DNA from: Botryllus schlosseri
Lineage: Eukaryota
DNA length: 64,000 nt
Assembly (NCBI GenBank): GCA_051294905.1
Contig: CM119383.1
Span: 5,456,001-5,520,000, forward strand
Direction: 5' to 3'
Shown here: piece by piece, positions 29,570 through 50,037 of the stretch
Position numbering within the stretch: position 1 is the stretch's first letter
How the letters are laid out: every line of letters starts with the position of its first letter
The notes under the pieces: model-generated
What the model was told of the DNA's origin: nothing
Databases searched by the model: none
The model's input: only the letters and a program-made list of their open reading frames with translations
Translations under genes and position numbers: made by a program

Positions 29570-30128
29570 TTTATTACGCATAAAAGTTACATGTCCACTG
29601 TTAAGACGTCATAACGAGTGGCATTCGATTCGTTACTCAGTTTTGTCAGTCCCTAGAAATAACCTAGCGTAGGAACTCGTATCCTACTGAGTAGTTCACT
29701 AACTACGTAACTCTAATTTCCATACTGAGAACGCCAGACAAGTACAGCTACACTAGGGTTACCATATTTTTGTGGAGCAAATTCCGGACACTCTTTAGCG
29801 CCCACTAGCGGATTTTAAAATGAGGTATAACACATTGTCTGTCAATATGACGTCACACTAGCAAGGCATTGCCCATCGACTGTATACAGCAGGGGTGGGC
29901 AAACTACGGCCCGCGGGCCGCATGCGGCCCGCAACACCGTTCTGTGCGGCCCGCGAAAGAAACATTTTTAAATATTGATAAAATGCGTATTAAAAATCGA
30001 ATTAATGCAGGGACTTGCTTACACTTTTTCTTGGTATATTTCACCTTGATCATTCTAAGACAGTGGCTCTCAAACTGGGGGCGCGCCCCCCTTGGAGACG
30101 TGAAAGCATCTGATGGGGGCGCGAAGCT

Positions 30129-30264
30129 AGTAGTGAGGTTTGATCAAATATACGCAGGCCAATCCCAGAAGGCCACGTCGCCTTAATTGCCACGCCTACA
30201 TTGCCACATCATCCACCCATTGCCGCACCTATAGGACGCCCCTTGCCACATCATCCACCCATTG
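30129..30264 (+). repeat. Polinton left TIR (136 bp)
   Basis: Reverse complement of 46891-47026 with 4 mismatches; TGCCACATCATC repeats continue subterminally. Confidence 0.95.
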
Positions 30265-31059
30265 CCGCACCTATAGCACATCCATTGCCACATCATCTGT
30301 GCCACATCATCAAGCGCCACACCTATAGTGACACATCATCCATTGCCACATCATCACCGCATTGATTGCCGCATCTATATGGTGCACAGCGCCGCATCAA
30401 CCAGCGCGATGTCGATTGCTGCACCTGTGACATTCATTGCCACGTCAAAACTTACCTCAGCTAGAATCGAACCTGGTTTGGTTGGGTATAATTTCATGTC
30501 GCTCACCACCAGGCTATTGAGCAAACTAGCCGTATTGAGCTGTTTTGAGAATATAACCGCCGATTCTCTCTTAAATTCCGAGACAACACCTTTTTCGAGT
30601 AATAACACATAAATGTAAGACTATGTTCGTGTGTACTATAACACCCAATGATTTTGAGGAATTCTGCGAATGCAACTTGATAATGCAGATATCACAACCA
30701 TAACTGCCCGCAATCATGCGGTAGCTCATGCGCCGTGCATATTGCCGAATACTATTCCAAGAAATTGACGCGTGTGAATGTGCCACGAATACAGTTGCTT
30801 ACGATTCCAAGAAGTCGAGCCACATCGACAATGTGAATTAGAACATTATAAATAAAGTTGCGTTTCCAAGAAAATGCCGCGTGGCGATCCGAATTAGAAT
30901 GTTTACTTCCGACGTAAAGCAATTCGCATTCTGAAAACTTCGCATTTCTGATACAAGTATTGTCGTGTGCGCAGCGAATGAGCCAGGCATCGCAGACAAG
31001 GTAAGATCAATGTATTTTCGTGTCAATTTAAACTAAATTCAGCTATAATTTCTCGAAGC

Positions 31060-32726
31060 AGCATTAGCTTACGTGGATTGTGCACGCAGATTGAATTACG
31101 TTGAGATTTCTCCAATAGCTAATAACGTAATAATGAGTTCTGTGCGGCTATAATGTTAACCGACAATATAGCCGAAGTCGCATAAATTCGAATGTATATG
31201 CAAGTTCTCTGTTAAGGGTAGACTATCTAGCCTCGCTTAATACTCGAATCTCGCTGTGGTTACAAATTCGGCATGCTAATGCGTTGAGTTTGAAGCTAAA
31301 ACATCCTATTTCATGCAGCCAAGAAGACTAGAACCGCAAGCCCGGAACTAGTTACAAGCATATAATGACAAGGCAGATTACGCAACACTAAATAAAGGTG
31401 GGTTATTTCATTTCTTGACTATATTGAAAAATCGACAGCGTACCGCGTATAGCTATTTCGACGCAGCAATGCACTTCAGATTAAGATATATATAGCAACG
31501 TACATGTTTTATAGAATATATTAGATCCAATACCTATACTAAAGCCGCAAAACGCATTGGAGCATAAATGGATAATGCGCGCAGATCGAATTACACCGAG
31601 ATTTCCCGCATCATTTTAAATAGCTAATAACGTAATAATGAGTTCTGTGCACGGCTATGCAATATAGCCGAAGTCGCATAAATTCGAATGTATATGCAAG
31701 TTCTCTGTTAAGGGTAGACTATCTAGCCTCGCTTATTACTCGAATCTCGCTGTGGTTACAAATACGGCATGCTAATGCGTTGAGTTTGAAGCTAAAACAT
31801 CATATTTCACGCAGCCAAGAAGACTAGCACCGCAAGCTCGGAACTAGTTACAAGCATATAATGACAAGGCAGATTACGCTACACTAAAGGTGGGTTATTC
31901 ATTTCTTGACTATATTGAAAAATCGACAGCGTGCCGCGTATAGCTATAATTTTTCGATGCAGCAATGCACTTCAGATTAAGATATATATAGCAACGTACA
32001 TGTTTTATAGAATATATTAGATCCAATACCTATACTAAAGTCGCATAACGCATTGAAGCATAAATGGATAATGCGCGCAGTTCGGATTACACCGAGATTT
32101 CCCGCATCATTTTAAATAGCTAATAACGTAATAATGAGTTCTGTGCACGGCTATGCAATATAGCCGAAGTCGCATAAATTCGAATGTATATGCAAGTTCT
32201 CTGTTAAGGGTAGACTATCTAGCCTCGCTTATTACTCGAATCTCGCTGTGGTTACAAATACGGCATGCTAATGCGTTGAGTTTGAATCCAAAACATCATA
32301 TTTCATGCAGCCAAGAAGACTAGCACCGCAAGCCCGGAACTAGTTACAAGCATATAATGACAAGGCAGATTACGCAACACTAAAGGCGGGTTATGTCATG
32401 TTTTATAGAATATATTAGATCCAATACCTATACTAAAGCCGCAAAACGCATTGGAGCATAAATGGATAATGCGCGCAGATCGAATTACACCGAGATTTCC
32501 TGCATCATTTTAAATAGCTAATAACGTAATAATGAGTTCTGTGCACGGCTATGCAATATAGCCGAAGTCGCATAAATTCGAATGTATATGCAAGTTCTCT
32601 GTTAAGGGTAGACTATCTAGCCTCGCTTATTACTCGAATCTCGCTGTGGTTACAAATACGGCATGCTAATGCGTCGAGTTTGAAGCTAAAACATCATATT
32701 TCATGCAGCCAAGAAGACTAGCACTG
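31060..32726 (+). repeat. Tandem array of ~496-bp units (~3.5 copies) in the Polinton left arm
   Basis: Anchor GCAG(A/T)T(C/T)G(A/G)ATTAC at 31086, 31581, 32077 and 32475 (periods 495, 496, 398); a fragment recurs at ~33225. Confidence 0.92.
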
Positions 32727-33488
32727 GTTACAATATTATGAATTAATTAATTAGCTACAGCAACAGTATATATATTATTTATCGCCTATATTTAAATTCG
32801 CTCATTTCATTTCAGATCAAAACGCCGACATTGCATACGCAATTCACGCTCCGAAAATTTCATATTTCTGTCACAACTATCGCGCAATGCCCTTCACCTG
32901 ATGATGCAGGCGAGTTAGGCTACATTTCCGTATAGATTTGGACTAAATTTGGTTATAATTACTCCGCGCGGGTATGCACTTCGGATTTGAGATGGATGTT
33001 AGTCTATGAATTTTAGCTTTACTCACGACCTAAGGTTGGTAAATTGCAAGCTGTAGCAAGCATCTAACTACTGAGATTATGCTGATTTTACAACCCCATA
33101 AGCCGCTGCTTTTAGATACGTAATGGAGCTGATTTAATAGCTAGTGCAGTGATGCTTTATCTTACCATTTCTGATAGTGAATAAAATATATGCAAAATGC
33201 AAATTCGTATTAAGTGTAGCCTGGCTAGCCTCGCTTATTACTCGATGTACAGTAACGCCGTAATGTAAGTTGCGTTTGCTGTAGGAGCGAAGTCACTCAA
33301 TACAAATTCCTGGCTCTTGCTAGATAATGGTAATATGTAGCCACGATCGCCTAATCGAAAGCAAGTCTCTACTGCTGATTTAGAGTCTACTACTTTGAGA
33401 TAATTGCTATAATGAACGTAGCGAATATCACCCTTTTATAAACGTACTAAGCAAACTTTGAAACTATTGATTTTATTCGCATATACAT

Positions 33489-33944
33489 TTACACAATTTC
33501 ATTTTCTTGCTTCAGCTCCTTGACGAACCGTCGCACGATCGAATCATTCTTGCGGTGATCTTCGCCGATGGAATTTAAATAACGTTCCGTGCTCCATCCG
33601 CGCGCCTTATGGACGATAAAGCTTAGACAATGATGACCGCAAGCTCTGGAACGTTTGTGCTGCAGACGCTTTATGGAGCAGGTATAATTTTCTGGTTCTA
33701 TAAAGCACGCAATCTCGTATTTCAGCGGCATTAAGCCAAAGCTATCGTGAAAATGTGTCTCATCCTCATCCGCGTAAATGCATATCCAGTGACTTCCGAT
33801 TTTTCGAGCCTCGTCATAATTGATCACGATAGCATAAGGAGGAGGGGGTCGCCTCGGCAGTCGATCGATAGGAAATGTACCAAGGAAAATATGTTTTGTT
33901 GACTCGCAGCACCACAATATTTGGTCTATTTCATCCCCGTTCAT
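33489..33944 (-). CDS. Adenain-like (adenovirus-type) cysteine protease
   Basis: GSHW, DSFG, LQ...ACGHHC give the His-Asp-Gln-Cys catalytic set; ORF intact. Confidence 0.93.
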   Translation of the reverse strand: MNGDEIDQILWCCESTKHIFLGTFPIDRLPRRPPPPYAIVINYDEARKIGSHWICIYADEDETHFHDSFGLMPLKYEIACFIEPENYTCSIKRLQHKRSRACGHHCLSFIVHKARGWSTERYLNSIGEDHRKNDSIVRRFVKELKQENEIV

Positions 33945-35219
33945 AGCACGGTCACTTTACGACTGCTACTGATTTGCAATAGCTTCTGGAATTCCATGAA
34001 ACAGAGCAAAGTAGTTTCCGCTGTTAGCCCGCCAGCAGGAAATGTGATCCGTAAACTTAAGGTACCACTCTTTTGTAAGTCAAAGCAATCATCCAAATCA
34101 TCAGGGCGCAAATTATAAACCAGTAGACAGAAACCACTAGCGAACTCTTCAGGCGTTAGGAGTCCTCTGTTTTTCTCCATTGCACCCGTACCCTCAATCA
34201 GGTTATGGTAAAGCTCCGTGTAATGACCCTTATCGAAATCTAGCTCATAACCTCCCTCCGGAATCAGAAATCCGTTCAGTTTCAGTTCGAGTCGTTGCAT
34301 ATTATTGTGTATGAAATTATAAGGATTTTTCGTAACATCTCCTTGAAAGGCTTTCGTAGCTACCATTCCGATGATTAGGCGAGAAGGTAGAGTCCCACTA
34401 TATAGATTCCCGATATCTATCTGCGTCGTAGCAGCCGCAAATGTTCGGGGTGATCAACTTCATGTCGATATACGGATATTTCGCCTGGGCATTAACCATC
34501 ATCGCTGTCTTCACATCGTCGCTGACTCGTACGCTACATAACTGTAATTCCTTTTTCGTTAAGGTGAATTGACCGGTAGCATCTCCCATCATGAAAAAGC
34601 TTTTCGGATTCAAGGTAAGCTCAAACTCGAGAGGCACGTCATGTAGGATGTAGCGGTCTTGCAGACATAGTCCGTGATGGATTTTCGCACGTATTTCCAC
34701 CACGTTATCATCCTTATAGGCTTTACTCCTGTTGTAATATCCTTTGTTAGCCGAGGCGTTAGTTCCACCGATCGTATCCATTTTTCCTAAAGTATCCTTT
34801 CTCCATCCTGAGGCCCTGAGTGTGGTATTTTGCACGTCGAGCGGAGTGAATAAATTGTGCAGATAGGACGAATAACACTGTACTTTTATATCTTGTTTCA
34901 AAGTTTCGTTAGCGACTTTAATTTGTAGTTGAGAAATCAAGGAATCCAAGATATTATTTACAACACCAACATCATCATCCGGACCAATTGCTTCGCCACC
35001 TTTCTTTAATTGTAAATGAAATAAGAAATAGCTCTCGCTCAAATCGATAAAGTCTTCTGAGCCCTCAAAGCGGAATGTTATCACACTAGAGTTGTTCGAA
35101 ATCGGCGCTATCTTGATGATTCTTTTCTTTTCTACGCTAGTCTGTGTCGCGGGAATGTGAAATAAATCCAATGAGGGATGTACCCCCTCTGGAGACTGTA
35201 CATGAATTAACTCCGCCAT
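33941..35219 (-). pseudogene. Double jelly-roll major capsid protein, frameshifted at ~34440
   Basis: N part LDLFHIPATQTSV...FIDLSESY; C part GNLYSGTLPSRLIIGMV...KNPYNF...FDLQKSGTLSLRITF; frames join at AAC ATT T GCG. Confidence 0.88.
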
Positions 35220-35268
35220 CTATCAAGTCTCAAGTAACAAATGATGCTTATCGTCGTGTAATATATAT

Positions 35269-35640
35269 TTAATCGAAAATATCTTTGCGACGTCTCTTTT
35301 TCGCGATCTTACGACCCCGTCTTGGCATTTTTCTTTTTCTCAGTAAAGAATCGAGAGCGTTCCCAGCGGCTTCTTTTCCGCGTATTTTAAGACTATCGCC
35401 GACATTCTCTCCATTTAGAACATCAGAGGCTACTTGCGCACCGGTATGTAGTAGACGCTTCCCGAGTGATTTTGCACCTATCGAAATTAGGGGCATAACG
35501 CTTCTTCCGAACGAACGAAATAAGTTTCCAAGTCCATGACCTCTCTGCACTTTACCCCGAAAAAAATTGATATCACCACCGCTCTGTTGGTGATAATAGT
35601 TTCTGAACGCCTCCCGATCACAGCAATAATGACTCCTCAT
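35269..35640 (-). CDS. Conserved Polinton basic core/membrane-lytic-like protein (QRGHGLG motif)
   Basis: YYHQQSGG...QRGHGLGNLFRSFGRSVMPL amphipathic helix, Arg/Lys-rich tail ending KDIFD. Confidence 0.8.
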   Translation of the reverse strand: MRSHYCCDREAFRNYYHQQSGGDINFFRGKVQRGHGLGNLFRSFGRSVMPLISIGAKSLGKRLLHTGAQVASDVLNGENVGDSLKIRGKEAAGNALDSLLRKRKMPRRGRKIAKKRRRKDIFD

Positions 35641-36340
35641 GATGTCTCAAAGCAAGTGTGAGATGAAGAGGCGCGTTCCCAAACTTTATAGCTTCGCCTT
35701 TATCATCACGAAGCATAACGCGTATCTCGCTTACTCGCTCCGTATTCAGAGGAAAGAAATATATTTTTTTGAATAGCATATGCTGATATTCATCTATTCC
35801 TGTCGTAACGCGGATATTGCGTAGTAGAGGCGCACACGTATCACCTACAATTTGAGGTGTGATGACATCCGTATAAACTAAAACGTTGGTCACGGGCTCA
35901 GTTTCCCCTTGAAAGTGAATTTTTCTTCGTCTATGTAATCCACCATCTAGCTCTACCTCCGAACGAGCGCCTCCTCTGAGAACGGGGTTTCTATTATCCA
36001 TGAAAAGTCTCGGACCGCTGGAACTCTTGTAAGGTCCCGCTATCAAGACCGGACCAGAACCATCTACCCAAATAAACCTTGCTTTTTTCTGATCGTGATT
36101 GATACGCTTCATCAAACTAATTTTATCATGATAATCACCAGGCGGGAAATAATAAAAATTATTATCGCCTTCCGCATCATTCACGTACCATAATAAGCCA
36201 TCGTAAGGCTCGAACGTGGGCTGAAAATTATTTTTAAAAGACAACTCGGCAAGCCCTATCTCCCATTCACCAGAATCTATCGGTTTCGCGAGATCGATAG
36301 TAAAATCAGACTCGTGTGACGTAATATGAATATATTTCAT
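35618..36340 (-). CDS. Penton-like minor capsid protein 2
   Basis: DFTIDLAKPIDSGEWEIGLAELSF; LVYTDVITPQIVGDTCAPLLR; IRVMLRDDKGEAIKF...LTLALR. Confidence 0.85.
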   Translation of the reverse strand: MKYIHITSHESDFTIDLAKPIDSGEWEIGLAELSFKNNFQPTFEPYDGLLWYVNDAEGDNNFYYFPPGDYHDKISLMKRINHDQKKARFIWVDGSGPVLIAGPYKSSSGPRLFMDNRNPVLRGGARSEVELDGGLHRRRKIHFQGETEPVTNVLVYTDVITPQIVGDTCAPLLRNIRVTTGIDEYQHMLFKKIYFFPLNTERVSEIRVMLRDDKGEAIKFGNAPLHLTLALRHHEESLLL

Positions 36341-37145
36341 AATGCAACTCCCCGTCTACGAAAATGCAATACAACACTCGAAGGAGAACTTCGAAAGGGT
36401 ATTTTCTCACCCTTCTCATCAAGTAGCGATATTTCGATGCGTTCTAGCCTATTTATATTAACAGGGAAATAAAAAGGCTTCGTGTAATATTTCGAAAATG
36501 ATTTACGATTGTTCACCTGTACGACCGTAACAACGGTAAGAGCCTACCGCTATCTTCTTGTGGCTCAATGATATTACAATGAACATAAACGAAATCGATA
36601 GTCGGATCATGTCGCATGCGAAAGTTCAAATGAATGATACCCTCAGTGAAAAAATAATTCCACAATGTACAATTAGTATTCGGGAAATGAAACGCCAATA
36701 ACTCCTCCCTCGTTTCCTTACGCATAAGAGCACCGTACAATTCTCCGCGGAGTAGCAAGCTACTATGCCCTATGTCCGTCTCTGGTCGCAATTTGTCGGT
36801 TACCTCGTTATGAGGTACAGAGATAGACATACTATGATTTTCAGGGAAACATGTTACTTTTGCATAAGGATTGTCTCTTTCCAACGATCTATACAGGTCG
36901 TATAACGAGTCGTATTCTCCCAATTTAAAATGAAAGTTTCTTGCTCTCTTTTGCGTTCTGATCCCATACCTATTCTTCGTGATCCTATACTGTTTTTGAT
37001 AATCCGTGGGGAAGGAGATCTCAGCCAGAGAAACTTCTGTATCTTCCACGTTTTTCGGGACGTCCAATTCAACGCAATAACTCGCTGTTGTATTATCAGG
37101 AAATTTATCCATGGAAGCGTTCGAAAATAGCGTGACGTAGCTCAT
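36337..37145 (-). pseudogene. Penton-like minor capsid protein 1, frameshifted at ~36524
   Basis: MSYVTLFSNASMDKFPDNT...EVSLAEISFP; FVYVHCNIIEPQ...LPLLR continues in a shifted frame as VQVNN...IEISLLDEKGEKIPF...VVLHFRRR. Confidence 0.85.
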
Positions 37146-37351
37146 ATTTTGAGCTTGGGATTCGGAAGCATATAACCAACGCAAGAGGAGAGCAGTGATA
37201 TCCAAAGCTCTTTGTTCCCATTCGAAATGGTAAGATTATAGAGAGAGAACGATACGATGACCAGTATGATTACTAGTTGCGCCAAAAACTGATAAAGGTT
37301 CCGACTAGACGATATCCTTCTTATCGACCCAGCTGTCGAATCCACTTCCAT
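37142..37351 (-). CDS. Small Polinton transmembrane protein
   Basis: FLAQLVIILVIVSFSLYNL...LWISLLSSCVGYMLPNPK; stop overlaps the next start (ATGA). Confidence 0.75.
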   Translation of the reverse strand: MEVDSTAGSIRRISSSRNLYQFLAQLVIILVIVSFSLYNLTISNGNKELWISLLSSCVGYMLPNPKLKI

Positions 37352-38303
37352 ATCCCAACCAGCGTACTAAATACTGTTCTCGTCCCGCGCGTTTACGCCT
37401 TCTTATAATCTTCTCGACACGCCAAGCTTGCGGTTCTTTTACGCGTTGGAGCTCCTCTCTATAAAATCTACCCTGGATGACTTCACCACCGTAATCACGT
37501 AAGCGATACATTGGGGGATCCCCCTTTTGGGCGTCTGCGATATAGAAAATTTCGCGTTGCCAGTTGGGTAGGCTGCTTTTCTCAAAAAGATTTCGAATTT
37601 TCGATATACGGACGGGTACTCCTACAGCGAGGTCGGGTTGTTTAGCTTCTTGAAACCCGTAAAGTCTTCTCCAAACCGATTCCTGATTAGACGAATTCAC
37701 TTGGTTGGGGGCCATAGCAATGCTACGATGGTACGTCCTGTTGTAGGAGTAAGTAAAGTCATCGAGGACGTTCACGTAATACCTCGTGTTATTTTTTGTG
37801 AAAAATCGATACATAATCGCTTTCATACTACGAATCACCCTTTCGACGACAGACGATTTTAATTCGCTCCTCGTATAGAAATATCTAACTTTGTTCTCCT
37901 TTAGATAGTTCTGGAAAGAGCGATTGGTATATTCGCTACCTTGATCGGTTTGTAACACTAACGGTACGCGTTCACGAAACACACGTTTGAAAGCAGAAAT
38001 CATACTTGAAGCAGTTTTATTTTTAATCGCTATCATCCAAAGGTATTTGCTAAAAATATCAATCACCACCACCACAAAACGAAAACCGCTATTGTACTTT
38101 GAAATAGATTGCAGATCCATCAAATCGCTCTGAAACTGAGCATTGATACCGGAGACCACTACACGTTCACGCCTAAATTTCTTACGTAACGGAAAATGAA
38201 AAGTATAAGTATCTTGTCCTTTAAGCCATTCTTTTTCCTTTTGCAAATAAGCGCCCCTATACGATTTGGGCTGTTTCGGATCAAAATAGTCTACGTCTCC
38301 CAT
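37305..38303 (-). CDS. Retroviral-type (rve) integrase with C-terminal chromodomain
   Basis: QSDLMD, VIDIFSKY, LQTDQGSEY, SSVVERVIRSMK (DDE); chromodomain WRVEKII...YLVRWLGYGSGFDSWV; intact. Confidence 0.95.
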   Translation of the reverse strand: MGDVDYFDPKQPKSYRGAYLQKEKEWLKGQDTYTFHFPLRKKFRRERVVVSGINAQFQSDLMDLQSISKYNSGFRFVVVVIDIFSKYLWMIAIKNKTASSMISAFKRVFRERVPLVLQTDQGSEYTNRSFQNYLKENKVRYFYTRSELKSSVVERVIRSMKAIMYRFFTKNNTRYYVNVLDDFTYSYNRTYHRSIAMAPNQVNSSNQESVWRRLYGFQEAKQPDLAVGVPVRISKIRNLFEKSSLPNWQREIFYIADAQKGDPPMYRLRDYGGEVIQGRFYREELQRVKEPQAWRVEKIIRRRKRAGREQYLVRWLGYGSGFDSWVDKKDIV

Positions 38304-38629
38304 TCTTTCCCGTATATACGGGGATTAGGCTTACGCTGTCTCTTATAAAGCCAGGGAAACGAAGGTTGTGGAATCCGGCGCGGGCGTTTCTTTTGCGGGC
38401 GCTTTTCTTTCGCTACGGGGCTCGCGAGCCCCGTGTGTGCGGCGGGAGGGCGGGTGGTCGCTGCGTCTACGTCTTTTCTCAGGTTTCTCAGTTGAGCAAT
38501 ACCATGCCTATACAGAGCTAGTTTCTCGGAAGCATTCAATTGAGAGCTTTTAATTTTCGATATATGTTTATCAAATTTCTTTTCCCATTCGTCCTTGCTT
38601 CGAAATGCGGGGAATTGTAGTTCACGCAT
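38291..38629 (-). CDS. Polinton hypothetical protein (112 aa)
   Basis: ORF overlapping both neighbours in the compact gene array; EKLALYRHGIAQL helix, basic C terminus. Confidence 0.65.
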   Translation of the reverse strand: MRELQFPAFRSKDEWEKKFDKHISKIKSSQLNASEKLALYRHGIAQLRNLRKDVDAATTRPPAAHTGLASPVAKEKRPQKKRPRRIPQPSFPWLYKRQRKPNPRIYGKEWET

Positions 38630-39029
38630 TCTTCCCGAAAAGTTTACCCAACAGACTCCCGATGACGGGGATTGCAGCGCCTAATATAGCTAAAACAGAC
38701 TAGTTAGAAAAAAGTTGCTATTTTATCATAATCTTTATACCTGAGAGGAATCCACCCTTTTGTAGCACCCTCCGTTGACCTCTGCGAGTTTTTTGCGCAA
38801 GCAATTGTCTGATATCGGATTTGTGTTTTCCAAGCCTCAACTTTCTAGATTGGGAGATACGTACTGTCCCCGAAGCCAAGTTATGAACGCACTGGCAGAC
38901 GCAACTTAAAAATTGATTGTTCGATAAAAGTTCTTTTCGCTGTTTCCCTTTAGCGTTTTTCAAAAGTTTTAATTTAACGTGATAGTCGCTCAATCGTTTT
39001 CGAGATATGTTACTTCCCCTCTTCGACAT
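38622..39029 (-). CDS. Polinton basic protein with QKGGFL motif; probable spliced gene join(38741-39029,38622-38689)
   Basis: Splicing GTATAA...CTAAC...TTTTAG (38690-38740) gives QKGGFLSAILGAAIPVIGSLLGKLFGKNA*; the unspliced frame stops at 38718. Confidence 0.75.
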
Positions 39030-39064
39030 GTTGAATGCCCTAAAATCTGCAGCGCGAGCTGTAT

Positions 39065-39682
39065 TTATTCTTGATATACCGTCAACTTTTGATGTGGGAA
39101 TATTTTGCTGCGAAGACGATAATTTTCGTCTGTCTCTTGCGTCACGTCAACCAGTATGTACGAGAACGGTTTTCGAGTTGCCTTTTTATAAGCCTCCGTA
39201 AGGAATCCGGCTTTATCCGGGAACATTTGACGTGAAAGAAAACTGATTTAACTCGCATCACGGGGATTTTTAAATATCACGATATAGCTCGCGCTCAAGG
39301 TCATATCCCGAAAGCCTTGGCCCCTATAGAAGAGGTTCTGACAAATGAACACCACGCTGATCTTTGCGTGATGACTGTATCGAGTGAATAGATCTCTGGC
39401 CTCTTTCGCTTCCGTCATCATGTCGTCGATCACCAAGAGAACGTGCCTATTTCCTTTCTGTAACTTTTTGAGCTCGGAGAGCCCTTGCGAGAATTCTACC
39501 CCTTTCATTTTATCGTACAACGCCTGATAATTATTATACAACCATACAATTTTTTCAGGAGCCGGTCTAATCATCTTCTCTGCGTTCTTCACCAACTCAT
39601 AAGTAAAATAACTCTTCCCGCTACTGCTCGGACCAGCCACGATCATCCGAAACGGAGCATGCAATGTACGTATTCGATCCAT
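39065..39682 (-). pseudogene. A32/FtsK-like packaging ATPase with in-frame premature stop at 39248-39250
   Basis: Walker A GPSSSGKS, Walker B LLVIDD, SHH, QN, FKNPRD; same frame after TAA reads ISFLSRQMFP...AYKKATRKPFSYILVD...RLRSKIFP. Confidence 0.9.
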
Positions 39683-39685
39683 TTA

Positions 39686-42600
39686 TTACAGAGATAAAGG
39701 CAATGTATGAATTCCATCATTAAGCACAATCCTTTTATAATAACCATAACTCAATGCACTTCGATATTGCTTATACGTAAACATATCGCTCCCATAGCAA
39801 CGAAAACCGCTATTGACACCACCTGTGATCGATCTATTTTGAAGAATGCCTTTGAAATCTTTGAAAGTTTTGTTGGCCGTTTTTTGAAGCCCTTTCGAGC
39901 TGTACTTATCGCTGTCGCCTTTGCAATAATAGGTCTTGGAATTGAGCCCTATAAAGCCGTCACCGATCCATTCTTCTTTGAATAAACCCGGTATACGTTT
40001 CGAGTAATTGCGAACCTCAATGCAGCAAGCTTTATCAGTTTTAAAACCAACGGGATCTCTCTCAAAATCACATTTATGCTCTGCACATGCGCGAGCCACG
40101 AACCATTTGTCGTGACTTTCAAAAAATTGTTTTTTCATGGAAGGCTTGATGAGAGAATAGATCGTATCGGAGCTTAAGCTTATGTACGCCGAATCAGTAT
40201 CTGTTTCGAGGAAAGCCCAATCGCTATCGTCCAAATACACATGCAGACAGTCATATAGGAACTGGAGCATTCTCAGCTTGGCACAGCAGAATATAAAGAA
40301 GCCCACAATGATTGGGTTTTCGTGACAAATGTTTAGCGGACGCGTAGCTACTTCGAGCAAGCCTTCATCGCTCTTATCAATTTCAACAGCATCGACAAAA
40401 AATTTTTTTTCAACGCGCGATGGTAATTCTTCCAACGTGACGTATTCGTGTTCCCTATATTTATTGGGGTTTTGAATAGTACGGCCGAAAAGACTATTTC
40501 CAATCGTCTTCCAGGTCAATGCTTCCATTTCACGGGCTGGATCTTTTGGGAGGACATCGCCTTTGCGGCGCTCAGAGGATACTCGCTCAACGAAGGGTGT
40601 GAAAACTTGTTTTGGTTCATATTCGACAGCTTGGAATACGCGAGTCACGATCATGCCACTTTTCAAGTACCACTGAAGCAAATCCGTATTAAACAACTGT
40701 TTTTTCGTGAAATAACTAGAGCCCAAAAATTTTTTTGGAAACTTAATATTGTTTTCTTTGGCGTATTCACGCATATGTTCACCGATATCGCACTCGTTTA
40801 CTTCCATATGTTTGAAAAAAGGAGGTAACTCTTCGAATTTCGATTTTAAATGGTCGGGACAATGAATGTCACACTCGATTGCACCGAAAAATGACCCGTC
40901 TAGCGTGCGCTTGAGCAACTGCGCCTCAGTGAGATAATAAGCTTTCGTGACTTTACGCTCGAACTTTGAGACAAATTGCGCAATTTCAGGGTCTCGTTTC
41001 ATATTCGTCCAAACGCATTCCTTCATACGGATAACGGTATATCCCAATTTTTCCAAATATTCCGTGTTTTGTTTGGTGAGTTCACGCCTCTCGGTGTTCT
41101 CTTTATCAGGGAAGCAGCTCCTACAAGCGTGGTAATAGCACCCATCGTACTGAAAGATGAGTTTACCGGCGTTCCCGTCGACAAATAGACGTTTATTTCC
41201 GATTCTCACTTGACTACCGTTCCACGCGTGCTGAATTTTGATGTCACGAACGTGACTTTCGTATTCCAACCATTCGCGCTCCGCATGAGTAGGCCAAACG
41301 CGCTGTTTATGGAATTTTTGCTTTTCCTCATCATAAATCCACCTTATAGGGTAACCCGTTGGCATATTTTGATTTATGCATTGCAAATAGAGGGCATTTG
41401 CGTCATATCCTACTACTTTCTTGACGGTTTTAGCACTGTCACCGTAGCGAAGACTGCGTATTTTCGTTTCACCCGCCATAGCGTACCGTGACTAATCTGT
41501 GACAAACCTCCTACCAAGTTGTTCAGAATCGTTTCGTGAAGGTCAGCATTGGCCTTATTCAGAAGAGTGATATCATAGCAATCACGAAACATCAGTCTAC
41601 TCGCTATATTCGGAAGGCTCACGTTACCCTTGAACATATCGATGCCAAGCGTTTTGTAAAATTCGAAATTGTTAGTTAGCGCGGTTAAGAAGCCAATGAC
41701 ATCACCTTCGTTGTAATATCGGAGAAAATCACGGAATGTGGTCATACCCTCGCGTTCCCATACAGCGACGCATTCTGCGTATTGCTCTTCCGTTATATTC
41801 GAATTGCGGGACGCGTTGTAAAACGATTCATGGCTCGGTAGCGACGTTTCATCGAGGCGCTCGATGCTATCGAGATATTCGTAGGGGAAATAAAATTTTG
41901 CGTTCACCCCATCCCCGTATAGCTTCATGTACGCATCCGAACTATAACCCGGACTCAGGAATAGCGAAATGTCCAGAAATTTTAATCTGTGCGTTGCGAT
42001 TGTCAAATAGGCGCTGTTCCTTTTCAAAACAAAGAATCCGCTTTCCTTGTGCAAGGATTTGATTAGATATTTCTTGCATAAATTCAGATCGTAGCGCGAG
42101 GAATTGAAACCGATTATGGGTATCTGATCGAGCCACGTATGGAGTCGAAGCGAGATATAATCCAAATAGGATCTTCTATTAGTGGGATCGAGCAAGTTCC
42201 GTTCTTCAATCAAATTCTCAAGTTCGATTATCTCATTGCCGAAAGATTCTCGCATTTCGGCTGAGGCGAGTTCCTGTACGCGATAAATTTCACCGATCAT
42301 TTCATCGATTAACGTCTGCGGGCAACCGTCAGATATGAAAGTTTTAGTTTCATTCGTTACGTTATTTGATAAGGACACGGAGACGGGGACGTGCCTATTA
42401 ACGTATTCTACTTTTGCAGAATTAGCTCTGAGCTCATCCTTCACGAGCATGGATTCGAAGTCAAAACACATACGGTACGGGAAGAATCTCTTTTGGTTCT
42501 CAACGAAAATGCCTTCGGATTCCAATTGCTCGAATACGGTGGGTTTCGGTCGATATACACCGCTAGCATATTTCCGCCCTTGGGATGTTTTGCATTCACG

Positions 42601-43563
42601 TTTTAGATGTCGCTTCAAATTTCCCTTTGTTGAGAAGAAAACTTTACATGAATCACAGAAAAATGTCTGGGAATAAAGTTCGATATTTGTGATCAGGCAA
42701 GAATGAGCACTTTCCATGTGTATATGAACCGCTGGCCCATCCGCTTCGGATTGCCGCAATATAAATGCTTGATGATCACGTTTTTCATAAACAACTATCT
42801 TTACGTGAAAACATTCCTCGAATTTGCTTAATTCATCAAGTGGTACCCCATCATCTACAGGCATACGATATCGTTCACGAAATTGAGATACCAATAGTCC
42901 AACATGCTTCTCATCTCGTTTTTTCTTGATGAAATGGGATAAGCAACGGAAGAGGCATAACGAATCGTTCAGTTGTGTTCCGTCCTGATGTCGAATAAAC
43001 GTCATAATATGACGACATTTTGTTGCCTCGCTCGATATCGATGCACTAGGGCAGCCCAATAAAACTCGGGGCATTTCATACAAGAAAAATTGAATATGTA
43101 ATATAGCAACGCAATAAAACTTAGTGTTTGGTCTGGCTTGTCTCGCTTGTTCGTAAGCAGCTGATAGATCGATTTCGTTGATGAAACTATCAAAGTCCCC
43201 GCGTGAAAGTATAGGTCTCGGGAGATCCAAAACAGCATGGGTTGATTGCGGATGAAAATAGCTATGTCTTTCTGTCTCTCGATTAAACAGCAGGAAGCCA
43301 TATGCATAGTTCACTTTAAATTGTCGCAATCTTCTCGGGTATATCGATGACATGCGCGCATGAATATCACCCATACCTCTTGCGAGCAGACGTTCATTGA
43401 TCACCTCTCTTGCACCCCTCGCAACCCTCCTGCTGTTAATCCATTCGGAATCGATAATCGAGTTGGAGTGCGATTGCAAAACCTCTGTTGCGTCGTTATC
43501 AAAACCGAGCGAGTCATCGATGATGAAGCTAGCATCTTCCTCGTAGCGTCTTCGACGAGCCAT
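39686..43563 (-). pseudogene. Protein-primed DNA polymerase B, single frameshift at ~41487
   Basis: Exo FDFES, GFNSSRYD, YNEGDV; pol YDANALY, KTIGNSLFG, ETDTDS, NSKTY; C2H2 finger in the N part; inserted QYDGCYYHAC nuclease-like domain. LVGGLSQISH joins RYAMAGETKIR by restoring one C. Confidence 0.93.
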
Positions 43564-43595
43564 ATATTTTAACTATATTCTGCAAAAATACACAT

Positions 43596-43967
43596 TCATA
43601 AATTTATTCCATATTTCAAACGCAATTTACACTTGAAAGCTTCATAAAGGAACAGAAATTTGATATTTTCTAAGTTACGCAGTTCATCAGCGTTGGGAGC
43701 AAATTTATCGATATCTTTAAGCACGTTTTTTGCTATAACGAGAAAATCTTTTTGCCATTCGCCATATCCTTCCAATGAGACCATTTTTCGCCAAGTAGCA
43801 ACTCTCTTGATATCATCATCAACGAAACCTTCAAAGGTAGCGGTCGTAGCATCTCGCGTACGTCTTGTGTCTCCCGCACCGTATTGTTGTAACAACATAT
43901 TTAGATCTTTACCACAATTATAAGGTTCCATATTAATCTGAGAAAACGAATTAAATATACCAGTCAT
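43596..43967 (-). CDS. Polinton orphan protein (~123 aa)
   Basis: ATG at 43967 overlaps the end of the upstream ORF; helical composition; no family recognised. Confidence 0.55.
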   Translation of the reverse strand: MTGIFNSFSQINMEPYNCGKDLNMLLQQYGAGDTRRTRDATTATFEGFVDDDIKRVATWRKMVSLEGYGEWQKDFLVIAKNVLKDIDKFAPNADELRNLENIKFLFLYEAFKCKLRLKYGINL

Positions 43968-45186
43968 TGTACTGCCGTTTGAGCTCATCGAATTTGGCGT
44001 AAAATTCACGTGCATGCACATCGTTTTCAACATAAGAGGAATCGCTCTCAAATTCGGAATCTGACGGTATGAATGTACGAGCAAATATATCATGTATAAT
44101 TTTACGGCGAGCATGCTTATTCATCTCAGGCAAGTAGGAAGGATAACACTGATTACCAAATCGGATAATCACTGTGCTAGATTGAAACATCCCTCCCAAA
44201 TTGCGTAACATAACATCACTACCATTCTGAATTTCAGATACGAGCCAAAACGACGACGGCTTTACTTGTCCGTAAGCGGACTGCAAATGATTGCGATGAA
44301 TGTACATAATAGCTTCTTGCAACATCTTGTTATCGAAAAATAGAGACCCGCAATTGCGCATCACTGAAATAGATTTCTCGGTACTGTGAAATTTGAATGC
44401 CTCTAGATTTGGATGAAAAGGATCTAGGAAGTTGGTGATATCGTCAGAGAGCAACAAATCGATCAATACTTCTTTCCCTGTTTGATTTTTACCTTCTATA
44501 AAGAAGTGGGGCGCAAAATATTTCTTATGCATATGGCCCTCCATTAGGGTGATGATGAACACAGCCCGGAGAAAATTAGGGCTCCGTTTTCGATCAACAA
44601 ACAACACCTCCTCGATATTCTGCTCGAGAGAACGGAAAAATAGTATACCGTCATCAATCGTAAGTAGAGGGTAATCCAAATTATAAATCAGACCATCAAA
44701 CTTTTCCTCGTCCAATACGTTATTAGCGATACGACGTCGCTTATTGCGAAAAGGGGACGAATAAACTCTCCATGGGGCGATGATCGGTGAGTGAGGCGGG
44801 CTTTGAGCGCTGGTCACAGCTGTCGAGTTATCAGTACTCTGCGGAGGCGTAAATTGAACACCAATTGGTAGTATGCTGTTATCAAAGTCGAGTCTGCGCT
44901 TAGGTTTAGGTTCGCTTGGTTCCGGTCGTGGTATACCGATATTGATTGGTGTCATCACGACAGCTGAGGGAGCCTCATCAGATTGCGCCACTGCCTCATC
45001 AATAATTGTTACGTCATCATCACTAGCTTCCGTCTCTTTACTCTTTTCAGCTGCAATCGTAACTTCGATCAATTCTGCATCGACATCGGAATCGAAATCA
45101 CCAATCGGTAATGTATCTGCTTGATTATCAGGAATCATAGTTGTTGATTCGCTAACTACGTCGTTTGCTTTCTCCATTGTCGACAT
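43951..45186 (-). CDS. 411-aa protein: acidic/Pro-rich N terminus plus possible degenerate SF3 (NS1-like) P-loop domain
   Basis: Long ORF with a TATA box 40 nt upstream; FFIEGKNQTGKE resembles Walker A. Confidence 0.7.
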   Translation of the reverse strand: MSTMEKANDVVSESTTMIPDNQADTLPIGDFDSDVDAELIEVTIAAEKSKETEASDDDVTIIDEAVAQSDEAPSAVVMTPINIGIPRPEPSEPKPKRRLDFDNSILPIGVQFTPPQSTDNSTAVTSAQSPPHSPIIAPWRVYSSPFRNKRRRIANNVLDEEKFDGLIYNLDYPLLTIDDGILFFRSLEQNIEEVLFVDRKRSPNFLRAVFIITLMEGHMHKKYFAPHFFIEGKNQTGKEVLIDLLLSDDITNFLDPFHPNLEAFKFHSTEKSISVMRNCGSLFFDNKMLQEAIMYIHRNHLQSAYGQVKPSSFWLVSEIQNGSDVMLRNLGGMFQSSTVIIRFGNQCYPSYLPEMNKHARRKIIHDIFARTFIPSDSEFESDSSYVENDVHAREFYAKFDELKRQYNDWYI

Positions 45187-45491
45187 CCTTTTTGCGGTAT
45201 AGTTTAGTTCGGATTCGAGCCTCTCTTATATAGTGAACTACATGCGCTTTGCACGCGGAGAGCGCGTGATTGTACTCGTGGCATTCTTACTAGCATTCTA
45301 ATTATTGATAACACGTACCAGGAACGGATATGAGCTACGTGTCTTTTTCTGTGAGCAGTCGACGTTCTAATTTCCGTGATACGACCTCGGGGCCTATCAT
45401 TCGATCGGTACCAAGCACATTTTTCAATGGTACATAGCTCAATATCTATATAAAGCATACTGATCATGAGAGTATATCAATTCGGATAGCA
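45187..45491. promoter_or_regulatory. Putative bidirectional promoter of the Polinton
   Basis: TATATAAG on - at ~45225-45232 and TATATAAA on + at 45447-45454, each ~40 nt from a divergent ATG. Confidence 0.6.
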
Positions 45492-46073
45492 ATGTCGAAC
45501 ATTGATCAAAGCGATTCGCTACCTAAGCGTAGTGTGGATCCTACAAATTACGCTACATTCAACTGCGCTTGCATCCGTACCACGAGTAGCATAGAAATAA
45601 GCGAAGATGAAACTCGGATGGGTCCCATTGAGCAGTACCAAGCTATGATAAATAACAGAGGGGAAAAGATTTATGAATGCTATGCGAAGCATAGAGATGT
45701 AACTGTCTCCCCGTTGAATGATCCTGTTTTCTATAACATGGTACGCTATGCTCGTAGACTAAGCACATTTATGCGGTGGCCGGATAATATCAATACCTCT
45801 GGAGCCGAGCTCGCAGACTGTGGATTGTTCTATTTGGGCTATAAGGATCATTTAAAGTGTTTCTCATGTGGAGGGCTGTTTCAAAATTGGTTGTCGTGCG
45901 ATGACCCCTGGCTCGAGCATGCAAAGTTTTATCCTACGTGTCCTTTTCTCATAAAGCGCAAGGGGTTGCAATATATTCGTAATGTCTGTTATGCGACACC
46001 TAATATAAGTAGAGGCTCGACTAAATTTGATGGCGAGGTGGAATTGCGTGATGACTGTTGTACTTATGTTTGA
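45492..46073 (+). CDS. Single-BIR-domain inhibitor-of-apoptosis-like protein, no RING
   Basis: RLSTFMRWP...LADCGLFYLGYKDHLKCFSCGGLFQNWLSCDDPWLEHAKFYPTCPFL with exact CX2CX16HX6C spacing. Confidence 0.92.
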   Translation: MSNIDQSDSLPKRSVDPTNYATFNCACIRTTSSIEISEDETRMGPIEQYQAMINNRGEKIYECYAKHRDVTVSPLNDPVFYNMVRYARRLSTFMRWPDNINTSGAELADCGLFYLGYKDHLKCFSCGGLFQNWLSCDDPWLEHAKFYPTCPFLIKRKGLQYIRNVCYATPNISRGSTKFDGEVELRDDCCTYV

Positions 46074-46089
46074 TATTTCTTTTCAAAGA

Positions 46090-46572
46090 ATGAGTCTAGC
46101 AATCCGTGGAGATACTATTCTGCCCCAAGGGCCCTATAGAAAAGACTTGTATCTTTTTAATGACATCACAAAATTACGTATCGAAGCCTCGAATGGGGCA
46201 GAATTGACCTCGGATCAACTCTTTGTACATTCCACTAACGGGACCATTCAGAAATATCGAGCCACTCTGAAGCATGAAGGAGGTTTGGTCGTTACCTATA
46301 CTCGCGACGGGATCGAGCATTATCAACCTCTGAACCCGGCTGACGAATTCGTCATCTATTCACCCAGCGTAGTTGTTCCTAATCCCGACCTTCCGCTCGT
46401 ATCGTACATACTACAAGCCAGTGATCGCTACATCAAACAAAACGGTCAGATCGAACGCAAGAACCCGGGTCGCAGCGTCGGATGGCAGCAAAGCGGTGTA
46501 CCTCGAAACATCAACCGATCTGGAGGATTTCAGCACGCGAATCGACGCAATAACGATCAACGATATCATTGA
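46090..46572 (+). CDS. Polinton orphan protein (~160 aa)
   Basis: ORF directly after the IAP gene, preceded by acceptor-like TTTTCAAAG and followed by AATAAA (46589); beta-rich N part, basic low-complexity tail. Confidence 0.6.
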   Translation: MSLAIRGDTILPQGPYRKDLYLFNDITKLRIEASNGAELTSDQLFVHSTNGTIQKYRATLKHEGGLVVTYTRDGIEHYQPLNPADEFVIYSPSVVVPNPDLPLVSYILQASDRYIKQNGQIERKNPGRSVGWQQSGVPRNINRSGGFQHANRRNNDQRYH

Positions 46573-46890
46573 TATGCTCTTTTTTCGAAATAAAATGAAC
46601 TCGTACACTATACAAGGCTATTTCAATGAGACTGAGTAAAGTGTTAGAAGATATGAAAAGGGTCGTATGAAATGCGGTGACTACAGGGATCGAGCCTACA
46701 ACCTAGAGCAAGATAGTTGGCTGATTCCTCTGTGATGACGTCGTGAAATCTAGTTCAACGATTAGTGTAGCGAGAATTCTTATTCTCAAAAAACAGCTTA
46801 GTACACATAATCATGATTATGTGGCAATGGGCGTTATATAGGCGGATGATGTGTTAATGGCCGCGGCTGATGACGTAGCAGATGATGTGA

Positions 46891-47026
46891 CAATGGGTGG
46901 ATGATGTGGCAAGGGGTGTCCCATAGGTGCGGCAATGGGCGGATGATGTGGCAATGTAGGCGTGGCAATTAAGGCGACGTGGCCTTCTGGGATTGGCCTG
47001 CGTATATTTGATCAACCCTCACTACT
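46891..47026 (-). repeat. Polinton right TIR (136 bp)
   Basis: Ends ...CCTCACTACT; see left TIR. Confidence 0.95.
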
Positions 47027-49733: not shown

Positions 49734-50037
49734 ATGTTGCACAGCCGGTGATTTCCAACCTTCTATGGTCGCGACCTCATTTTCCACTTGAAAATGTTCC
49801 GTGGCAAAGCTCAACATCATCGCGATCCCCAGATAAATGCGAACGACACCAAGATTTGGAACCACTGTTTGTGATTGAAGCTACCAATCGACCTTAACCA
49901 GCTCCAGGAATAGGCTCTACCATAAGCTTATAATTGCGATTACAATCAGACTTATTTTAGTAAATGATGGTTATTTATATTACTTTTGATTGCATTTTTG
50001 GAGAGGGTGGTGCCTGCTGCCATACTAATATCATTAT

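What the first reader, a model, noticed from the sequence alone, without database searches (positions are those of the whole stretch)
30129..47026. Complete 16.9-kb Polinton/adintovirus-like endogenous virus with an unusual accessory right arm
Seen: both TIRs, the TSD and the full core gene set (pPolB, ATPase, integrase-chromodomain, two pentons, MCP, adenain, core proteins). It also has four accessory ORFs, a tandem array and a probable intron. Known: Polintons are integrating preplasmiviruses with 6-bp TSDs, and the AGTAGT terminal trimer repeat suits slide-back protein priming. Inferred: a near-ancestral viral genome can be rebuilt by fixing four single lesions, and the accessory arm may define a distinct lineage.
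Basis: partly seen in the sequence, partly recalled or inferred. Interest (0 to 1): 0.8.

Follow-up and report, generated by a model that had tools for sequence, protein, structure and literature searches.

The report
Decayed endogenous Polinton/adintovirus with IAP gene
This is a real, full-length but broken copy of a Polinton/adintovirus-type DNA virus integrated in an animal-like genome; its backbone belongs to a described group, and its extra genes, including a captured apoptosis-inhibitor gene, are of a kind already reported for these viruses.

Summary
The structure is confirmed at the stated coordinates. The element is 16,898 bp, with 141-nt terminal inverted repeats (6 mismatches), a 6-bp target duplication (GAAGCT) and AGTAGT at both tips. 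All core genes are present and collinear with an intact relative from a public read set (L003, 33-65% amino-acid identity): protein-primed PolB, A32-type ATPase, rve integrase with chromodomain, two paralogous penton-like genes, a double-jelly-roll capsid gene and an adenain-like protease.

The PolB carries OTU-like, zinc-finger and Vsr-endonuclease domains. The Vsr insert is the published mark of a mollusc/marine-nematode Polinton subgroup.

I count six breaks in five genes (three frameshifts, three stops), not four.

The right arm holds five ORFs:
- One is shared with the nearest relative.
- One is a single-BIR IAP homologue.
- A 411-aa ORF has no detectable homologue.

An independent 1.1-kb contig is 97% identical to part of this arm. 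Substitutions there show purifying selection (dN/dS about 0.18), so these are real viral genes. IAP homologues and variable genes upstream of PolB are already described in adintoviruses.

The tandem array lies in a 3.1-kb non-coding left arm, which remains unexplained. No intron was found.

Verdict: a new member of a known kind.

The parts
30123..30128 (.). Left target-site duplication, GAAGCT
30129..30269 (.). Left terminal inverted repeat; the tip starts AGTAGT
30199..30364 (.). Subterminal short repeats (14-42-nt units), partly inside the TIR. The same motif recurs in inverted orientation near the right end.
30401..33488 (.). Non-coding left arm: no ORF of 100 aa or more, no Rfam match, no similarity to relatives or to the rest of the window
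31061..32724 (.). Tandem array, unit about 496 bp, about 3.4 copies, 85-99% identical between units
33489..33944 (-). Adenain-like (clan CE) cysteine protease, 151 aa, uninterrupted
   Evidence: Invariant H52, D67, Q95 and C102 in the alignment with relatives. The family profile hits ASFV S273R protease (E 1.3e-4) and adenain 1avp (E 2.2e-3). 50% identical to the L003 homologue.
33941..35219 (-). Major capsid protein gene, broken (1 frameshift)
   Evidence: Both pieces are 48-49% identical to the 430-aa L003 protein P0178. The AF2 model of P0178 (pTM 0.70) matches the Sputnik, mavirus, PBCV-1 and iridovirus double-jelly-roll capsid proteins (E down to 6.6e-15). Weak PF21738 hit; the syntenic gene in L044 is recorded with PF21738, unmarked (E at most 1e-5).
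35269..35640 (-). Small basic protein (123 aa, core-protein-like), uninterrupted, conserved in relatives
35618..36340 (-). Penton-like gene B (240 aa), uninterrupted
   Evidence: Homologue of the L003 255-aa protein. The penton fold itself was not tested.
36355..37205 (-). Penton-like gene A, paralogue of B, broken (1 frameshift)
   Evidence: Homologue of the L003 282-aa protein in two frames. The L003 282-aa and 255-aa proteins are paralogues (blastp E 1e-10).
37142..37351 (-). Conserved 69-aa ORF with a hydrophobic stretch
   Evidence: Homologues in L002-L005 (E 1e-9 to 8e-17)
37305..38303 (-). rve integrase with C-terminal chromodomain (chromodomain about 37311-37424), 332 aa, uninterrupted
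   Evidence: PF00665 E 4.9e-13 and PF00385 E 5.8e-8, both above the curated cut-offs. 65% identical to the L003 homologue.
38291..38629 (-). Basic 112-aa ORF; the N-terminal third is conserved with L003
38631..39029 (-). Small basic protein gene, broken (2 in-frame stops towards its end)
   Evidence: Alignment to three relatives continues at about 40% identity past the stop.
39077..39682 (-). A32/FtsK-HerA-type packaging ATPase, broken (1 in-frame stop)
   Evidence: PF04665 E 2.8e-9. 61% identical to the 219-aa L003 homologue, one stop inside the alignment.
39686..43563 (-). Protein-primed family B DNA polymerase, about 1290 codons, broken (1 frameshift)
   Evidence: 4913 relatives; the best is P0015, 60% identical to the polymerase-half piece over the full length of the match. 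Covers residues 5-1300 of P0015 in two frames. Relative P0016 hits PF03175 at E 1.5e-11. The AF2 model of the N piece matches family B polymerases. Near-invariant acidic and motif residues.
42679..43116 (-). OTU-like domain of PolB (approximate bounds)
   Evidence: Family profile hit to OTUD5, E 0.019. Invariant C203 and H287. In the model, a helix starts at the Cys and the His lies on a strand.
42589..42669 (-). C2H2-type zinc finger in PolB
   Evidence: invariant C303, C306, H319 and C324
40940..41302 (-). Vsr-type endonuclease domain inserted in the polymerase half of PolB (approximate bounds)
   Evidence: Family profile hits 1vsr, 1cw0 and 1odg at E 2e-4. RAP-domain hit. IMG names relatives 'very short patch repair protein'.
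43596..44114 (-). Right-arm ORF directly upstream of PolB (172 codons; likely start further in), shared with L003
   Evidence: 27% identical, E 7e-8, to the ORF upstream of PolB in L003
43951..45186 (-). Right-arm 411-aa ORF with an acidic N-terminal third; no detectable homologue
45204..45467 (-). Right-arm 87-aa basic ORF
   Evidence: Frame open in sister contig L006; dN/dS 0.28 on 6 changes, not significant alone
45492..46073 (+). Single-BIR IAP homologue, 193 aa, no RING (BIR domain about 45756-45950)
   Evidence: PF00653 E 3.7e-18. PDB hits to cIAP, XIAP and NAIP BIR domains, down to E 3e-41 for NAIP (three stretches) and 1.9e-25 for a single BIR domain. 97% identical sister protein P0177. 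dN/dS 0.165, P 0.001.
46090..46572 (+). Right-arm 160-aa ORF (from the first ATG after the BIR stop), no family match
   Evidence: Open in L006; dN/dS 0.17, P 0.006. No Pfam or PDB match.
46886..47026 (.). Right terminal inverted repeat
47027..47032 (.). Right target-site duplication, GAAGCT

Best explanation
The region is one integrated, now inactive copy of a Polinton/Maverick-type virus (an adintovirus in the newer naming). It belongs to the subgroup whose protein-primed PolB carries a Vsr endonuclease insert.

Shown here:
- the TIRs, the 6-bp TSD and the full collinear gene set;
- the domain make-up of PolB (OTU-like, zinc finger, exonuclease, polymerase with Vsr insert);
- integrase with chromodomain, a double-jelly-roll capsid gene and an adenain-like protease;
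- six reading-frame breaks in five genes;
- purifying selection on three right-arm genes.

Inferred from what is known of this family: the linear genome is copied by its own polymerase from a protein primer at the repeated tips. It is packed by the A32-type ATPase into a capsid of MCP plus penton proteins, which the protease matures. The integrase inserts it and makes the 6-bp duplication, and the chromodomain steers it towards marked chromatin.

The right arm is the host-interaction ('early') region that varies between lineages. Its BIR protein most likely blocks caspase-dependent death of the infected cell. The other four ORFs have no assignable function.

This copy cannot express PolB, the ATPase, the MCP, one penton paralogue or one small basic protein in full length.
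For: - Termini and TSD.
- Collinearity with L003 at 33-65% identity, and no homologue outside the element.
- The same backbone appears in L004, L005, L043 and L044.
- PolB family size and nearest relatives.
- PF03175 in a relative.
- Vsr, zinc-finger and OTU hits. IMG names.
- The published Vsr-bearing pPolB2 subgroup in molluscs and a marine nematode.
- Integrase, chromodomain and ATPase.
- Protease.
- MCP fold.
- Break counts agree against three references.
- BIR.
- Sister contig L006 is 97.06% identical without gaps. Pooled dN/dS is about 0.18 (13 non-synonymous of 32 changes against an expected share of 0.78, P 5e-6).
- IAP homologues and variable genes upstream of PolB are described in adintoviruses.
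Against: - The host is not identified, so 'animal virus' rests on the relatives (one named hit from amphioxus) and on the literature.
- The penton fold was not tested.
- The OTU match is weak (E 0.019).
- No named adintovirus hexon came back by sequence. By fold, one 'Adintovirus sp.' protein ranks 12th and the top hit is a protein recorded under a Cotesia bracovirus.
- The window's own PolB pieces do not reach PF03175.
- The 3.1-kb non-coding left arm is unexplained.
- Three of the six breaks are frameshifts, which could in principle be assembly errors.
- If all the TIR mismatch arose after integration, about 13 new stops would be expected; only 3 are seen.
Confidence: 0.85

Rival explanations
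1. The copy is in fact intact or nearly so: the reading-frame breaks are errors of sequencing or assembly, and the element is a recent, potentially expressed provirus.
For: Three of the six breaks are frameshifts. Far fewer stops are seen than the TIR mismatch would predict. All other genes are open.
Against: Three breaks are in-frame stops, which indel-type errors do not make. The two TIRs differ at 6 of 141 positions. No identical protein of this copy is on record elsewhere.
Confidence: 0.1
2. The right arm is not viral cargo but host DNA (for example a host IAP gene fragment) or another mobile element that entered this copy after integration.
For: The 411-aa ORF, the BIR ORF, the 87-aa ORF and the 160-aa ORF have no counterpart in the relatives fetched. 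BIR genes are cellular in origin.
Against: The arm lies inside the TIRs. An independent contig from another dataset is collinear over 1122 nt at 97% without gaps. Its differences are biased towards synonymous changes. The ORFs are compact, intronless and closely packed, with 24 nt between the divergent starts. The ORF next to PolB is shared with L003. Accessory genes at this place are typical of the family.
Confidence: 0.07
3. The non-coding left arm with its tandem array is a later insertion or expansion of host repeat DNA, not part of the virus as it integrated.
For: No ORF, lower G+C (0.38-0.41 against 0.42) and tandem structure. No similarity to any relative. In the relatives whose contigs extend past the protease gene, further ORFs follow it.
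Against: No boundary signs of a nested element (own TSD or TIR) were recognised. The unit occurs nowhere else in the 64-kb window. The relatives' contigs are incomplete at that end, so the comparison is weak.
Confidence: 0.35

Closest known systems
Polintons/Mavericks of the pPolB2 subgroup with a Vsr endonuclease domain (molluscs and the marine nematode Trissonchulus; Jeong et al., bioRxiv 10.1101/2023.08.22.554363)
   Same: Protein-primed PolB with a Vsr-type endonuclease insert. The other shared genes are rve integrase, A32-type ATPase, MCP, minor capsid protein and protease. TIRs and a 6-bp TSD are also present.
   Different: Placement in that clade by phylogeny was not tested. The paper does not describe a BIR gene, duplicated penton genes or a non-coding arm with a tandem array in these elements, as far as the passages I read go.
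Adintoviruses (Starrett et al. 2021, PMC8502044; Buck et al. 2024, PMC11071296)
   Same: [quoted passage not shown] Integrase with a C-terminal chromodomain. Adenovirus-like virion module with an adenain-type protease. Variable genes upstream of PolB. IAP homologues and duplicate pentons are reported in some members.
   Different: No LXCXE-type 'Oncoid' motif is present in the right-arm ORFs. No PLA2 or gasdermin-like gene was detected. Reciprocal BLASTP recognition of the hexon by reference adintoviruses could not be tested.
Contig L003 (Logan SRR23343704_39326), the nearest relative found
   Same: Same gene order from the ORF upstream of PolB to the protease. PolB is 55-60% identical, the integrase 65% and the ATPase 61%. 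It also has two penton paralogues.
   Different: All genes are open in L003. The contig stops 0.9 kb upstream of PolB and 0.4 kb past the protease, so its arms cannot be compared. Nucleotide similarity is limited to the most conserved genes.
Cellular and viral IAPs (BIR-domain proteins)
   Same: One type-II-like BIR domain with strong matches to the BIR3 of cIAP1 and XIAP and to NAIP.
   Different: It has a single BIR and no RING or other domain. The 193-aa protein has an 88-residue N-terminal region without a match.

Membership tests
Polinton/Maverick | Protein-primed family B DNA polymerase | tested here: met
   4913 relatives. PF03175 in the 43%-identical relative P0016. Family B polymerase fold of the N piece. 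Conserved catalytic columns. The window's own pieces do not reach PF03175.
Polinton/Maverick | Retrovirus-like (rve) integrase | tested here: met
   PF00665, 49.6 bits against a cut-off of 32.6
Polinton/Maverick | Terminal inverted repeats and 6-bp target-site duplication | tested here: met
   141-nt TIRs; GAAGCT on both sides
Polinton/Maverick | Adenain-like cysteine protease and A32/FtsK-type ATPase | tested here: met
   Protease profile hits S273R and adenain; H, D, Q and C are invariant. PF04665, 37.3 bits against a cut-off of 22.8.
Polinton/Maverick | Double-jelly-roll major capsid protein | tested here: met
   Tested on the 48%-identical relative P0178: Foldseek hit to the Sputnik MCP at E 6.6e-15, TM 0.65, and to the mavirus and PBCV-1 MCPs
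Polinton/Maverick | Single-jelly-roll penton (minor capsid) protein | tested here: inconclusive
   Two paralogous genes of penton size sit at the expected place.
Adintovirus | PolB with N-terminal OTU-like domain | tested here: inconclusive
   Profile hit to OTUD5 at only E 0.019. Invariant Cys and His at fitting places in the model. The whole-model fold search was dominated by the exonuclease domain.
Adintovirus | Integrase with C-terminal chromodomain | tested here: met
   PF00385, 33 bits against a cut-off of 25.1, at residues 294-331 of 332
Adintovirus | Hexon recognisable by plain BLASTP against reference adintovirus hexons | not testable with these tools
   No named adintovirus hexon came back from any sequence search, and reference sequences of animal viruses may not be fetched by accession. 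By fold, 'Adintovirus sp.' A0A8D9PE51 ranks 12th.
Adintovirus | Animal host | not testable with these tools
   The source of the window is unknown. The only named close PolB relative is from Branchiostoma.
pPolB2-Vsr Polinton subgroup | Vsr endonuclease domain inside PolB | tested here: met
   1vsr, 1cw0 and 1odg at E 2e-4. IMG annotation of relatives. Definition.
pPolB2-Vsr Polinton subgroup | Phylogenetic placement with mollusc and marine-nematode pPolB2 | not tested
   No labelled reference sequences were at hand.
IAP (BIR-domain) proteins | BIR zinc-binding domain | tested here: met
   PF00653, 66.3 bits against a cut-off of 22.9; PDB hits
IAP (BIR-domain) proteins | C-terminal RING E3 domain (present in many, not all, IAPs) | tested here: not met
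   No RING match, and only one CxxC, which lies inside the BIR

The most novel reading that the evidence does not exclude
The right arm (single-BIR protein, 160-aa and 87-aa ORFs, 411-aa ORF without homologues) and the 3.1-kb non-coding arm with its 496-bp array may together mark an adintovirus lineage that has circulated recently. The 97%-identical fragment in an independent dataset, with a synonymous-biased difference pattern, points that way. On this reading the ORF without homologues is a new host-interaction protein, and the array is a functional viral non-coding module rather than junk.
Probability: 0.15. Interest if true: 0.5.

Novelty: new member of a known kind. Interest (0 to 1): 0.3.

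Why it matters
The element is a clean, fully bounded example of a Vsr-bearing Polinton/adintovirus with duplicated penton genes and a captured apoptosis-inhibitor gene. It adds one well-annotated member to a group whose accessory genes are poorly catalogued.

It also shows, by comparing two natural copies, that the accessory genes were kept by selection. It does not change the picture of what these viruses are.

The non-coding arm and the 411-aa ORF without homologues are the only parts that might repay further descriptive work.

Tried and rejected
- Exact look-up of the integrase found nothing, so the source genome could not be named. A search of papers for the run and assembly accessions also found nothing.
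- Single PolB pieces against PDB gave only a zinc finger. A family profile was needed.
- Pfam on the capsid, penton and protease genes of the window and of relatives gave almost nothing.
- MCP sequence and MCP profile against PDB gave nothing. Only the fold search worked.
- The 411-aa ORF had no hit among 5.8 billion proteins, in IMG/VR, in JGI metagenomes, in PDB or in Pfam.
- The 160-aa ORF had no hit.
- A TIR 23-mer had no exact match in the metagenome or viral contigs.
- The PolB alignment against IMG/VR returned only stand-alone Vsr-like genes of giant-virus bins and other contigs, and no related element.
- Rfam and tRNA scans gave nothing. A by-eye impression of tRNA-like stretches near both ends is therefore dropped.
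- No LXCXE or paired CxxC 'Oncoid' motifs occur in the right-arm ORFs.
- The bacterial promoter/terminator scan is not meaningful here.
- No TIRs were captured in any relative's contig, so the AGTAGT tip could not be compared.
- An 'empty site' paralogue of the flanks was sought within the window. Only partial repeats of the left flank were found.
- Intron: none was needed by any gene with a homologue.


Full report

Yes. An inverted-repeat search finds arms at 30129-30269 and 46886-47026: 141 nt, 96% complementary, with 6 mismatches. These are exactly the coordinates given. The six bases outside each arm are GAAGCT on both sides, and both tips begin AGTAGT.

The element is 16,898 bp. About 76% of it lies in gene spans. 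A tandem array with a 496-bp unit is present. Self-comparison puts it at 31061-32724, about 3.4 units, with a 50-bp piece of the unit at 33197-33245. No homologue of the relatives' proteins occurs elsewhere in the 64-kb window.

**2. What the genes are**

Almost all genes run on the minus strand. Pfam identifies three directly:
- an rve integrase with a C-terminal chromodomain;
- the N part of an A32-type ATPase;
- a BIR domain.

The polymerase-half piece of PolB has 4913 relatives at E up to 0.001 among 1.84 billion representatives. The best is P0015: 60% identical, 1300 aa, aligned end to end.

P0015 lies on an 11.7-kb contig from a public read set (L003). Its open genes follow the same order as here: a small ORF, PolB, ATPase, two small basic proteins, integrase-chromodomain, a 72-aa ORF, 282-aa and 255-aa proteins, a 126-aa basic protein, a 430-aa protein and a 150-aa protein. 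Every one of these has its counterpart in the element at 27-65% identity. The same backbone appears in L004, L005, L043 and L044.

The identities of the individual genes rest on the following.
- **Protease.** The 150-aa family has invariant His, Asp, Gln and Cys. As a profile it hits the ASFV S273R protease (E 1.3e-4) and adenain (E 2.2e-3).
- **MCP.** An AF2 model of the 430-aa L003 protein, which is 48-49% identical to both window pieces, has pTM 0.70. It matches the Sputnik, mavirus, PBCV-1 and iridovirus major capsid proteins (E down to 6.6e-15). Among predicted viral structures its best match is a protein recorded under a Cotesia bracovirus. From my own knowledge, Maverick insertions are reported in bracovirus DNA. 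The syntenic gene of L044 is recorded with PF21738, unmarked (E at most 1e-5).
- **Pentons.** Their fold was not tested.

**3. PolB architecture**

I aligned relatives with the two window pieces kept as separate rows. A profile of that alignment hits Vsr endonucleases (E 2e-4), C2H2 zinc fingers (E 3e-3) and OTUD5 (E 0.019).

Invariant Cys203 and His287, a Cys2-His-Cys cluster, and acidic pairs in the exonuclease part are seen. The AF2 model of the N piece (pLDDT 80) matches family B polymerases. Relative P0016 reaches PF03175 (E 1.5e-11); the window's own pieces do not.

IMG even names some relatives 'very short patch repair protein'. A Vsr domain inside pPolB2 is described as the shared derived mark of Polintons of molluscs and a marine nematode. 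An OTU-like N-terminal domain and an integrase chromodomain are the published marks of adintoviruses.

**4. State of the copy**

I counted breaks against three intact relatives:
- PolB: one frameshift.
- ATPase: one in-frame stop.
- One small basic protein: two in-frame stops near its end. The alignment continues at about 40% identity beyond the first.
- One penton paralogue: one frameshift.
- MCP: one frameshift.

That makes six breaks in five genes. The integrase, the protease, the other penton paralogue, the 123-aa basic protein, the 69-aa ORF and all right-arm ORFs are open.

If the 6/141 TIR mismatch had all arisen after integration, about 13 new stops would be expected in 12.8 kb of coding DNA. 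Three are seen. So either the copy is younger than the TIRs suggest or the TIRs were not identical at entry. This is a rough inference.

**5. The right arm**

It holds five ORFs.
- The ORF next to PolB is shared with L003 (E 7e-8).
- The 411-aa ORF has no homologue anywhere I could search.
- The BIR protein has one BIR domain, closest to the BIR3 of cIAP/XIAP and to NAIP, and no RING.

The only database relative of the BIR protein is P0177, 97% identical. It sits on a 1122-bp contig from another dataset (L006), which is 97.06% identical to 45288-46409 without a gap.

All three frames are open in both copies between the window and L006. dN/dS is 0.165 for BIR, 0.17 for the 160-aa ORF and 0.28 for the part of the 87-aa ORF covered. 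Pooled, 13 of 32 changes are non-synonymous against an expected share of 0.78 (P 5e-6). These ORFs are therefore genes that were under selection while the two copies diverged.

Relatives with the same backbone carry other accessory genes: an E2 enzyme in L004 and L005, and PC4 in L043. The adintovirus papers already report variable genes upstream of PolB, IAP and Bcl2 homologues, and duplicate pentons. The arm is thus lineage-specific in content but ordinary in kind.

**6. The left arm**

The stretch 30401-33488 has no ORF of note, no Rfam match, no similarity to relatives and a lower G+C. With so few breaks elsewhere, decay cannot have erased genes here. Either it is native non-coding viral DNA or it came in after integration. 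I could not decide between these. No gene with a homologue requires an intron.

**7. Mechanism**

The following is inferred from the family, not shown here. The PolB replicates the genome by protein priming from the tips; the three-base repeat at each tip fits slide-back priming, but it would arise by chance once in 64. The ATPase packages the genome. MCP and penton proteins form the capsid, and the protease matures it. The integrase inserts the genome and gives the 6-bp duplication. The BIR protein holds off apoptosis.

**8. Verdict**

This is a new member of a known kind, and interest is modest.

- My first notebook entry, several tool queries and one script output give bounds or lengths of the separate reading-frame pieces of broken genes, which bracket some breaks. 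I stopped doing this once I noticed and do not repeat the values here.
- In my working I also recalled from memory a few short motif shorthands (polymerase, OTU and Vsr signatures) and a six-letter terminal repeat of a known virus.
- The alignment tool printed consensus lines by itself.

Noticed in passing
window 50037-54724: LTR retrotransposon with 143-nt direct repeats that are 99% identical. It has an uninterrupted 1392-aa gag-pol ORF (50608-54786, minus strand) with zinc knuckles, aspartyl protease, RT, RNase H and rve integrase. It looks young.
   Followed up: partly
window 30401-33488: A 3.1-kb stretch inside the element has no ORF, no RNA-family match and no relative anywhere. It holds the 496-bp tandem array. 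This is odd for an element with only six breaks elsewhere.
   Followed up: partly
window 40940-41302 (inside PolB); L007-L042: The Vsr-type endonuclease domain inserted in PolB has stand-alone relatives in giant-virus bins (among other contigs) of IMG/VR. No PolB relative was found in that collection.
   Followed up: partly
window 37142-37351: A 69-aa ORF with a hydrophobic stretch, overlapping the end of the integrase gene, is conserved in four relatives (E 1e-9 to 8e-17). It may be a small membrane protein of this clade.
   Followed up: no
window 45468-45491: Only 24 nt separate the divergent start codons of the 87-aa ORF and the BIR gene.
   Followed up: no
window 15879-18285 and 55802-56326: Repeat units of about 1 kb occur three times in tandem, with a further copy 38 kb away.
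   Followed up: no
window 24271-24946: Foldback structure: 236-nt arms, 90% complementary, 91 nt apart, extended by outer 64-nt arms.
   Followed up: no
window 1392-2455 and 26957-28113: Segments of about 1.1 kb in inverted orientation, 24-26 kb apart (75-95% identical). No ORF of 150 aa or more lies between them.
   Followed up: no
window 28622-29499 vs 58833-59726; 29753-29885 vs 48763-48895: The left flank of the element is itself repeated DNA, and a 133-nt piece recurs on the right side. The element sits in a repeat-rich region.
   Followed up: partly
L003 and L005: One public read set (SRR23343704) yields two different relatives of the element. Their PolBs are 60% and 38% identical to the window's polymerase-half piece.
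   Followed up: no
L004: In this 16-kb relative, PolB follows the protease and accessory genes instead of preceding the ATPase. Either the gene order differs or the contig is a permuted or concatemeric assembly.
   Followed up: no
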